Assembly: GCF_001194135.2 (NCBI RefSeq)
Contig: NC_068987.1
Span: forward strand, 44,515,669-44,577,369
Origin: Octopus bimaculoides
Taxonomy: Eukaryota
Length of the DNA: 61,701 nt
Direction of reading: 5' to 3'
A program made the translations under genes and the position numbers. The notes below the pieces were generated by a model. The model was not told where the DNA came from and searched no databases. It saw only the letters and a list, made by a program, of their open reading frames with translations. Shown piece after piece: positions 18,283 through 18,934 of the stretch; the first letter of the stretch is position 1, and each line of letters opens with the position of its first letter.

Positions 18283-18934
18283 CTGAGTGCTTGTTAAGGT
18301 GATACTTTAATTTTTATAGACACATTAAAAGGAGAAAAAAGCAAGAAACGAACCTAATTAAAACATATTTGATTTACATACCTCACCCTCCCCACATTTT
18401 TGCTTTCATGCATATGTTTGATACTTTATCTGCTTCAAAATCTTACATCTTTTGTGTTGTGAATTCATACCCACTGCAGACATTTTACTCTAATTTAAAT
18501 GCAAGATTGCATATTATATATCTCAGCCTACTTAGTTATAAAGGCATTGATACATGATCATCTGAAGAATATAATTTATAGTGAATTGGTGTTATATCCA
18601 GTGGATGTTCATTTCACATTTGTATAATACTATAGAATCCAGAATCAAAGACCAGCTGTACTCATAAGGTTAAGTAGCTGAATTACTTACTAATCACTAT
18701 ATTGTTAATTCAAATACTACCAAAGTCATAGTATTGTGCCTGTGGTCAAGTAAGTAACACAGCTTGCCTCGGTTTTAGATAATAAACAAAGTGTATTTTT
18801 GCCTTACAGCTGAGTCATTAGCATTAAGAAAGGTCTAACAACAATTACTATAAAAATAAAGCCAATACAAAGTCCCTGTCATTGAAACATGGATGTAAAA
18901 TGTGTAGTTAAGTGACATTCAGTAAAAAGGATAC
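18283..18934 (-). other. U12-type (minor spliceosome) GT-AG intron, 652 nt
   Basis: 5' splice site GTATCCTTTTT matches the RTATCCTTT consensus. Branch point CCTTAAC (18293-18299) sits 10 nt before the 3' end. No polypyrimidine tract. Splicing restores the frame (TT|A = Leu). Confidence 0.9.

What the first reader, a model, noticed from the sequence alone, without database searches (positions are those of the whole stretch)
18283..18934. U12-type minor-spliceosome intron in a mollusc NOL11-like gene
Seen: donor GTATCCTTTTT, branch point CCTTAAC 10 nt from the 3' end, no polypyrimidine tract, phase 2, and in-frame joining of two NOL11-homologous exons. It is the shortest intron found in the gene (652 nt; the others are 1.4-5.3 kb), and I see no recognisable TE in it. 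Known: U12 introns are rare, often positionally conserved and can be rate-limiting. Inference: the minor spliceosome may tune this t-UTP ribosome-biogenesis factor. Standard gene predictors often mis-model such exons.
Basis: partly seen in the sequence, partly recalled or inferred. Interest (0 to 1): 0.7.

Follow-up and report, generated by a model that had tools for sequence, protein, structure and literature searches.

The report
Conserved U12 intron in octopus NOL11
The 652-base stretch is a textbook minor-spliceosome (U12-type) intron in the Octopus bimaculoides NOL11 gene, and it is the direct counterpart of the NOL11 minor intron already catalogued in human and mouse, so it is real but not new.

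Summary
On the minus strand, 18934..18283 is a 652-nt, phase-2, GT-AG intron. Its donor is TTT|GTATCCTTT. The branch site CCTTAAC ends 10 nt before the AG, and there is no polypyrimidine tract.

I built a PWM from 168 curated human and mouse minor introns (MIDB). With it, the donor is the best of 18,199 candidate sites in the window. The branch site lies within the range of known minor introns. The other 12 introns of the gene score strongly negative.

The window is Octopus bimaculoides. RefSeq NOL11 (XP_014769470.1) maps at 100% identity and already uses this exact junction.

The intron is orthologous to the known NOL11 minor intron of human and mouse. In gibbon, rat, O. vulgaris, limpet, scallop, oyster, Lingula, amphioxus and sea urchin, NOL11 has exactly one U12-like intron. 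In each it sits at the same alignment column, in phase 2, followed by a 79-nt exon.

So the U12 reading is supported, but this is an ancient bilaterian minor intron that is already known. The claim that it is the shortest intron holds within the window. The mis-modelling worry does not apply here. The "tuning" idea is untested in octopus. Interest is low.

The parts
18283..18934 (-). U12-type (minor, GT-AG subtype) intron of NOL11. It is 652 nt, phase 2, and is the eleventh of the 13 introns present in the window.
   Evidence: exact spliced mapping of XP_014769470.1. PWM scores.
18926..18934 (-). 5' splice site GTATCCTTT; the 12-mer with exon context is TTT|GTATCCTTT.
   Evidence: It is the only match in the window. 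It scores 13.6 bits on a PWM built from 168 MIDB minor introns and ranks first of 18,199 [GA]T sites. The identical 12-mer scores 96.13/100 in MIDB for mouse Dap3 and Slc12a7.
18292..18303 (-). Branch-point 12-mer ATCACCTTAACA. The core CCTTAAC is at 18299..18293, and the candidate branch adenosines are at 18295 and 18294.
   Evidence: It scores 9.7 bits, the 24th percentile of known minor BPS, about 78 on the MIDB scale by regression. The A at +10 lies 11 nt from the 3' end. It is the best BPS score among the acceptors tested in the gene.
18283..18284 (-). Terminal AG of the intron (3' splice site), not preceded by a polypyrimidine tract.
   Evidence: 49% pyrimidine against 62-84% at other acceptors.
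18935..19060 (-). NOL11 exon upstream of the U12 intron (126 nt; …SIDELSNGEQQ…CPLNQQIAAY + TT).
18204..18282 (-). NOL11 exon downstream of the U12 intron (79 nt; A + CQLLSYPFSDVYLSHAMKTLPFKYAV), followed by a GTAAGT donor. This exon is 79 nt in all 10 species examined.
11081..54117 (-). The part of Octopus bimaculoides NOL11 present in the window, covering residues 45-623 of XP_014769470.1. There are 14 exons: 54117-54004, 48703-48647, 46486-46289, 43180-43036, 39620-39462, 37961-37879, 32984-32805, 28194-28126, 22835-22648, 21271-21146, 19060-18935, 18282-18204, 16114-16031 and 11209-11081.
   Evidence: 100% identity, with GT-AG at every junction. The first 44 residues and the true last exon are not found in the window.

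Best explanation
Window 18934..18283 (minus strand) is a U12-type, GT-AG-subtype intron of the Octopus bimaculoides NOL11 gene. NOL11 encodes a t-UTP / SSU-processome factor.

The inferred mechanism follows the established U12 pathway. The U11/U12 di-snRNP recognises the donor GTATCCTTT and the branch site CCTTAAC together. The branch adenosine lies 11-12 nt from the AG, so no polypyrimidine tract or U2AF-type recognition is needed. U4atac/U6atac.U5 then catalyses removal of the intron, joining …IAAY-L-CQLL… in frame.

The intron is the ortholog of the catalogued human and mouse NOL11 minor intron and was already present in the bilaterian ancestor.

Shown here: the sequence signals, the exact junction used by annotated proteins, and positional orthology.

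Inferred, not shown: dependence on the minor spliceosome in octopus, and any rate-limiting or regulatory role.
For: (1) Signals. The donor TTT|GTATCCTTT scores 13.6 bits on a PWM built from 168 MIDB human and mouse minor introns, which is the 43rd percentile of real minor donors. It is the top-scoring site of 18,199 in the window. The same 12-mer scores 96.13/100 in MIDB itself. The BPS ATCACCTTAACA scores 9.7 bits (24th percentile), with C at +5/+6, A at +9/+10 and C at +11, and the +10 A lies 11 nt from the 3' end. Olthof et al. 2024 link C+5C+6 to use of the minor-type branch point, and C+5C+6 and C+11 to ZRSR2 binding. The exon bases at -2 and -1 are TT, not AG. The last 37 nt before the AG are 49% pyrimidine.

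(2) Contrast within the gene. The five other NOL11 donors scored with the U12 PWM give -7 to -21 bits. All 12 other introns begin GTAAG or GTAAA, and the checked acceptors have pyrimidine-rich tails.

(3) Junction use. RefSeq O. bimaculoides XP_014769470.1 maps at 100% identity using exactly 18935|18282. The O. vulgaris and O. sinensis proteins carry the same junction peptide.

(4) Orthology. Human NOL11 is a listed U12 gene. Its minor intron is chr17:67738356-67738931, with donor ACT|GTATCCTTT. Gibbon and rat have that intron after …RAAL, in phase 2. In gibbon, rat, O. vulgaris, Patella, Mizuhopecten, C. virginica, Lingula, Branchiostoma and S. purpuratus, NOL11 has exactly one intron with a positive U12 donor score (9.4-16.8 bits). 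In every case it is at alignment column 657, in phase 2, with a BPS 7-15 nt from the 3' end, and is followed by a 79-nt exon.

(5) Molluscs are relatively rich in minor introns, and Octopus sinensis is used in published conservation matrices.
Against: - There is no direct RNA evidence such as junction reads, lariats or snRNA knock-down. The evidence behind the annotated protein models is not visible to me.
- No minor snRNA gene lies in the window. The presence of the minor spliceosome in octopus therefore rests on the literature.
- The BPS has A instead of T just before CCTTAAC and sits in the lower quartile of known minor BPS scores.
- My PWM comes from 84 gene pairs of mammalian introns, not from intronIC or an octopus-trained model.
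- The generic two-motif architecture is not rare by chance in a 61-kb window (27% of shuffles).
Confidence: 0.92

Rival explanations
1. The intron carries U12-like motifs but is actually removed by the major (U2-type) spliceosome. It would then be a 'minor-like' or hybrid intron part-way through conversion.
For: The termini are GT-AG, which both spliceosomes accept. The BPS score is only in the 24th percentile of curated minor introns. Olthof et al. [quoted passage not shown]
Against: The donor matches U1 at only +1 to +3. Positions -3 to -1 are TTT and +4 to +6 are TCC. There is no AG at exon -2/-1 and no polypyrimidine tract. The BPS has C+5C+6 and C+11; Olthof et al. link C+5C+6 to minor branch-point use and both features to ZRSR2 binding. 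The donor score equals those of classified minor introns. The U12 character has been kept at this site in all 10 species sampled.
Confidence: 0.05
2. Beyond being a minor intron, it is maintained as a regulatory switch. Slow or conditional U12 splicing, or intron retention, would set NOL11 output and so couple ribosome biogenesis to minor-spliceosome activity.
For: The human NOL11 minor intron shows increased retention in RBM41-knockout cells. It is listed among regulated or retained minor introns in MIDB tables. The site has stayed U12-type in 10 of 10 sampled bilaterians.
Against: The intron body is no more conserved between O. bimaculoides and O. vulgaris (92.7%) than neighbouring U2 introns (87.6-94.8%). 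A pan-eukaryotic survey argues that neutral processes may explain much of minor-intron retention. All sampled lineages are slowly evolving and rich in minor introns. There are no expression or retention data for octopus.
Confidence: 0.2
3. The motifs are a chance coincidence and the region is not an intron at these borders, because of a mis-annotation or a different exon structure.
For: The loose two-motif architecture arises by chance in 27% of shuffled windows.
Against: The borders are fixed independently by 100% identity to the RefSeq protein. They are also fixed by an ungapped alignment across the junction in 10 species, with a 79-nt downstream exon in all of them. The nearest alternative AG (18306-18305) causes a frameshift into a stop codon, as read directly from the sequence.
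Confidence: 0.01

Closest known systems
Human and mouse NOL11 minor intron (MIDB / Olthof et al. 2019: human chr17:67738356-67738931, ENST00000253247; mouse chr11:107171694-107173209)
   Same: It is in the same gene, at the same alignment column and in the same phase 2, splitting the same conserved aliphatic codon (…AAL|L… against …AAY|L…). It is the same GT-AG subtype with the same GTATCCTT donor core, is followed by the same 79-nt exon, and is of similar length (576 nt in human, 652 nt here).
   Different: The octopus branch site (CCTTAAC) is closer to consensus than the human one (TTTTCCTTTAGT, MIDB score 74.4). The exon context is TTT| rather than ACT|. There is no experimental splicing data for octopus.
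U12-type (minor) introns of the GT-AG subtype in general (U12DB, IAOD/intronIC and MIDB classes)
   Same: It has the /GTATCCTTT donor, a TCCTTAAC-type branch site 10-15 nt from the 3' splice site, no polypyrimidine tract and a non-zero phase. It is a single minor intron in a gene otherwise made of major introns, and the gene has an information-processing function.
   Different: Nothing in the sequence departs from the class. The only deviation is A for T at the position preceding CCTTAAC.
NCBI RefSeq gene model 'nucleolar protein 11 isoform X1' of Octopus bimaculoides (XP_014769470.1), and the O. vulgaris CAI9726230.1 and O. sinensis XP_029638951.2 models
   Same: The junction 18935|18282 is already annotated.
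   Different: In what I could see, the source names and gene table, the models do not label the intron as U12-type. The O. bimaculoides model is truncated at the C-terminus, reading through the donor at 11101. The true last exon apparently falls in an assembly gap.

Membership tests
U12-type (minor spliceosomal) intron | 5' splice site matching /[AG]TATCCTT(T) | tested here: met
   GTATCCTTT at 18934..18926, a 9/9 match. It scores 13.6 bits on a PWM from 168 MIDB introns, the 43rd percentile of known donors, and is the best of 18,199 sites in the window.
U12-type (minor spliceosomal) intron | Branch-point sequence of TTCCTTAAC type close to the 3' splice site (about 8-20 nt) | tested here: met
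   CCTTAAC at 18299..18293. The 12-mer scores 9.7 bits, the 24th percentile of known BPS, and the +10 A is 11 nt from the 3' end.
U12-type (minor spliceosomal) intron | No polypyrimidine tract upstream of the 3' splice site | tested here: met
   49% pyrimidine in the last 37 nt before the AG, against 62-84% at five checked U2-type acceptors of the same gene.
U12-type (minor spliceosomal) intron | Terminal dinucleotides GT-AG or AT-AC | tested here: met
   GT at 18934-18933 and AG at 18284-18283.
U12-type (minor spliceosomal) intron | Poor fit to the U2-type donor and low U1 complementarity | tested here: met
   TTT|GTATCC matches the U1-type consensus (CAG|GTAAGT, from established knowledge) only at +1 to +3. 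All 12 other donors in the gene begin GTAAG or GTAAA. No formal U2 PWM or MaxEnt score was run.
U12-type (minor spliceosomal) intron | Removal depends on U11, U12, U4atac and U6atac snRNPs | not testable with these tools
   This needs snRNA inhibition or knock-down, or crosslinking, in octopus material.
U12-type (minor spliceosomal) intron | The host organism has a minor spliceosome | not tested
   No snRNA gene is in the window (Rfam). The literature reports that molluscs are relatively rich in minor introns and uses Octopus sinensis in conservation analyses.
U12-type (minor spliceosomal) intron | The junction is actually used in mRNA | tested here: inconclusive
   Annotated proteins of three Octopus species contain the junction peptide AAYLCQLL, and one maps at 100% identity.
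Orthologue of the catalogued NOL11 minor intron | Same position and phase in an alignment with species where the intron is classed as minor | tested here: met
   Alignment column 657, phase 2, with a 79-nt downstream exon in the window, gibbon, rat and seven other bilaterians. The human 12-mer in MIDB equals the gibbon donor I located.
NOL11 (nucleolar protein 11; Pfam NOL11_N PF08168 + Nol11_C PF20998) | Significant match to the family profiles, or identity to named members | tested here: met
   Nol11_C scores 28.4 bits against a cutoff of 25 on spliced C-terminal exons. Human NOL11 chain 7mq8_LI is hit at E = 1.3e-3. The sequence is 100% identical to RefSeq 'nucleolar protein 11 isoform X1 [Octopus bimaculoides]'.

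The most novel reading that the evidence does not exclude
The NOL11 minor intron is actively maintained as U12-type. It was neither lost nor converted in any of the 10 bilaterian lineages sampled, and its downstream exon is fixed at 79 nt. The reason would be that slow or conditional minor splicing gates production of this SSU-processome factor, coupling ribosome biogenesis to minor-spliceosome activity. In octopus it has also stayed compact and TE-free while its neighbouring introns expanded to 1.4-10 kb.
Probability: 0.15. Interest if true: 0.45.

Novelty: already known. Interest (0 to 1): 0.15.

Why it matters
The result confirms that a reader working from raw sequence alone can correctly spot a minor intron.

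It also gives a clean example of deep conservation. One U12 intron sits at the same codon position of NOL11, followed by a 79-nt exon, in molluscs, a brachiopod, an echinoderm, a cephalochordate and mammals. It was therefore present in the bilaterian ancestor.

This adds no new kind of element. NOL11 has been a listed minor-intron gene since 2007, and the octopus junction is already in RefSeq.

Its practical value is as a marker intron for minor-splicing assays in cephalopods. It also flags that the O. bimaculoides NOL11 model is truncated at an assembly gap.

Tried and rejected
(1) The search for homologous proteins with the spliced octopus peptide (70 aa, then 272 aa) found nothing. The Octopus proteins are nevertheless in the collection. 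A mixed octopus+human alignment returned only mammals in the listed top 120. The octopus and invertebrate orthologues came from the search of protein representatives with a mammalian profile.

(3) My first junction peptide contained a typing error, an extra L, which produced a spurious 1-residue gap against human. The correct peptide is …IAAYLCQLL….

(4) I guessed a downstream exon at 17623 (PFYEVTFFVKKW…), which would have made a 580-nt intron shorter than the U12 intron. Exact mapping of the RefSeq and O. vulgaris proteins showed this was wrong. The real next exon is 16114-16031.

(5) tblastn and an HMM of mammalian NOL11 detected only 3-4 of the 14 octopus exons.

(6) The motif-architecture shuffle test is not significant on its own (27% of shuffles).

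(7) Rfam found no RNA family anywhere in the window, so there are no snRNA or snoRNA genes in or near the intron.

(8) Cnidarian (Montipora) loci could not be fetched, and one sea-urchin isoform also failed. Whether the intron predates Bilateria was therefore not tested.

(9) I looked for extra sequence constraint in the intron body by comparing the two Octopus species. There is none.

Full report
**What is in the sequence**

The gene lies on the minus strand. Read 5'->3' on that strand, an exon ending …CCT TTG AAT CAG CAG ATA GCA GCA TAT TT is followed at 18934 by GTATCCTTTTTACTG…. The intron ends …AAAGTATCACCTTAACAAGCACTCAG at 18283. The next exon begins A TGT CAA CTT TTA TCC… at 18282.

The intron is 652 nt and phase 2, and the spliced reading frame gives …CPLNQQIAAY-L-CQLLSYPFSDVYLSHAMKTLPFKYAV. 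GTATCCTTT occurs once in the 61.7-kb window on either strand. The branch-site core CCTTAAC is at 18299..18293, followed by exactly 10 nt ending in AG. The base before it is A, so the 8-mer TCCTTAAC is not matched. Pyrimidines make up 49% of the 37 nt preceding the AG, against 62-84% at five other acceptors of the gene.

**What gene it is**

A concatenation of the candidate exons hits Pfam Nol11_C above its gathering score (28.4 against 25 bits). It also hits the human NOL11 chain of the SSU-processome structures 7MQ8 and 7MQA.

A profile of mammalian NOL11 searched against the representative library returned Octopus vulgaris NOL11 (P0265). Its cluster also holds O. bimaculoides XP_014769470.1 and XP_014769480.1, and O. 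sinensis XP_029638951.2.

Residues 45-623 of XP_014769470.1 map to the window at 100% identity through 14 minus-strand exons from 54117 to 11081, with GT-AG at every junction. The window is therefore Octopus bimaculoides, and the gene is already annotated as 'nucleolar protein 11'. The annotated proteins of all three Octopus species contain the junction peptide AAYLCQLL, so existing gene models use exactly 18935|18282.

**Is it U12-type?**

I built position weight matrices from 168 curated minor-intron 12-mers. These were 84 orthologous mouse/human pairs from supplementary file 3 of Olthof et al. 2019, the source of MIDB.

- The donor TTTGTATCCTTT scores 13.6 bits, the 43rd percentile of the curated minor donors.
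- It is the single best of 18,199 GT/AT positions in the window.
- The identical 12-mer is listed in MIDB with a score of 96.13/100 for mouse Dap3 and Slc12a7.
- The branch 12-mer ATCACCTTAACA scores 9.7 bits, the 24th percentile, or about 78 on the MIDB scale by regression.
- Its +10 adenosine is 11 nt from the 3' end.
- It has C at +5/+6 and C at +11. Olthof et al. 2024 link C+5C+6 to use of the minor-type branch point, and C+5C+6 and C+11 to ZRSR2 binding. The exon ends in TT rather than AG.

By contrast, the five other NOL11 donors scored give -7 to -21 bits on the U12 matrix. All 12 other introns begin GTAAG or GTAAA, and the checked acceptors have pyrimidine-rich tails.

One caveat applies. 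A loose 'GTATCCTT … CCTTAAC … AG within 5 kb' pattern arises in 27% of shuffled windows. The motifs alone would therefore be weak evidence. What makes the case is that they sit exactly at exon borders that are defined independently.

**Orthology with the known NOL11 minor intron**

Human NOL11 was listed among U12-intron genes in 2007 (PMC1874599). MIDB gives its minor intron as chr17:67738356-67738931 (576 nt), with donor ACT|GTATCCTTT and BPS TTTTCCTTTAGT. Mouse Nol11 has donor GCT|GTATCCTTC and BPS GTTTCCTTAACT.

In the gibbon locus the same donor lies after …QKRAAL, in phase 2, in a 570-nt intron. Rat has CT|GTATCCTCC with BPS TTTTCCTTAAGT.

I then fetched the NOL11 loci of seven more species and mapped each protein exactly onto its DNA. 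These were O. vulgaris, Patella caerulea, Mizuhopecten yessoensis, Crassostrea virginica, Lingula anatina, Branchiostoma lanceolatum and Strongylocentrotus purpuratus.

In every species exactly one intron has a positive U12 donor score (9.4-16.8 bits), with a BPS 7-15 nt from the 3' end. In a MAFFT alignment of the ten proteins, that intron falls at the same column (657) and in the same phase (2) in all ten. The alignment is ungapped across the junction, and the following exon is 79 nt in all ten. Many other intron positions of the gene are shared as well. The octopus intron is therefore the ortholog of the catalogued vertebrate NOL11 minor intron, and it dates at least to the bilaterian ancestor.

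**Side claims**

Within the window, 652 nt is the shortest of the 13 introns; the others are 1376-5300 nt. I had briefly proposed a nearer downstream exon that would have contradicted this, but exact protein mapping showed my guess was wrong.

Being the shortest intron is not a general property of this intron. It ranks 8th of 17 in gibbon and rat, and in amphioxus it is 9.9 kb.

The intron shares no repeat with the rest of the window and is 652 nt against 653 nt in O. vulgaris. Neighbouring introns, by contrast, carry Pif1-2B (Helitron-like) and reverse-transcriptase ORF fragments.

The intron body is 92.7% identical between the two Octopus species, within the range of adjacent U2 introns (87.6-94.8%). 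Nothing therefore points to an embedded conserved element. Rfam finds no RNA family in the window.

**Mechanism and function**

The best-supported mechanism is ordinary minor splicing. U11/U12 would recognise the donor and branch site cooperatively, no polypyrimidine tract would be needed, and catalysis would be by U4atac/U6atac.U5. This follows from established knowledge of the U12 pathway and was not shown here.

Human cells lacking RBM41 show increased retention of the NOL11 minor intron (PMC11039992), and the site has remained U12-type in all ten lineages sampled. However, those lineages are all slow-evolving and rich in minor introns, and a pan-eukaryotic survey argues that neutral processes may explain much of minor-intron persistence (PMC10639083).

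**Verdict**

Novelty is 'already known'. This is the octopus copy of a catalogued, deeply conserved minor intron, and RefSeq already annotates the junction. Interest is low (0.15).

Noticed in passing
window 9051-11101 (minus strand); L003 50496-51954: The RefSeq O. bimaculoides NOL11 model ends by reading through the donor at 11101 (…EKR|VRKPFSV*). O. vulgaris and O. sinensis continue after a 1459-nt intron with a last exon encoding VEFVDQLASIEAYLTQ…HIP, which is not found anywhere in the window. Its expected place, about 9.6 kb, falls in the N gap at 9051-9720. The C-terminus of the O. bimaculoides model is therefore probably an assembly-gap artefact.
   Followed up: partly
window above 54117: Residues 1-44 of XP_014769470.1 (MAILKEAFTLCRLPSEEE…) could not be located in the window. 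The first coding exon must lie in a gap or beyond the window end, and an acceptor (…TTTTATAG|) immediately precedes 54117.
   Followed up: partly
window 19351-19698 (+) and 3437-3607 (-): There are ORF fragments with a Pif1 helicase 2B domain (Pfam PF21530, E = 2e-16 and 4e-12), typical of Helitron-type elements. The first lies inside the 2085-nt U2 intron immediately upstream of the exon that precedes the U12 intron.
   Followed up: partly
window 24307-25116 (-): Reverse-transcriptase (RVT_1) ORF fragments lie inside the 5290-nt NOL11 intron. Similar RT-like ORFs and a repeated SINE-like unit (…LSEWLALGRASSCRNSAK…) recur across the window. Together with many (TA/TG)n tracts and 12 N gaps, they explain the large introns.
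   Followed up: partly
L005 1-39 and L007 1-3: In scallop and Lingula an SMG1 kinase gene lies on the opposite strand about 300 bp upstream of the NOL11 start, suggesting conserved head-to-head microsynteny. I did not check whether SMG1 lies upstream of NOL11 in octopus.
   Followed up: no
L006 7080-62741: In Branchiostoma lanceolatum the NOL11 gene model has three very long introns around the U12 site (10.4, 9.9 and 35.2 kb), in a gene whose other introns are 0.2-5 kb. I did not examine whether this reflects TE load, a nested gene or an assembly or model problem.
   Followed up: no
protein searches: The word-indexed protein search returned no hit for peptides that are 95-100% identical to Octopus NOL11 proteins present in the same collection. 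Negative results from that tool should not be read as absence.
   Followed up: yes
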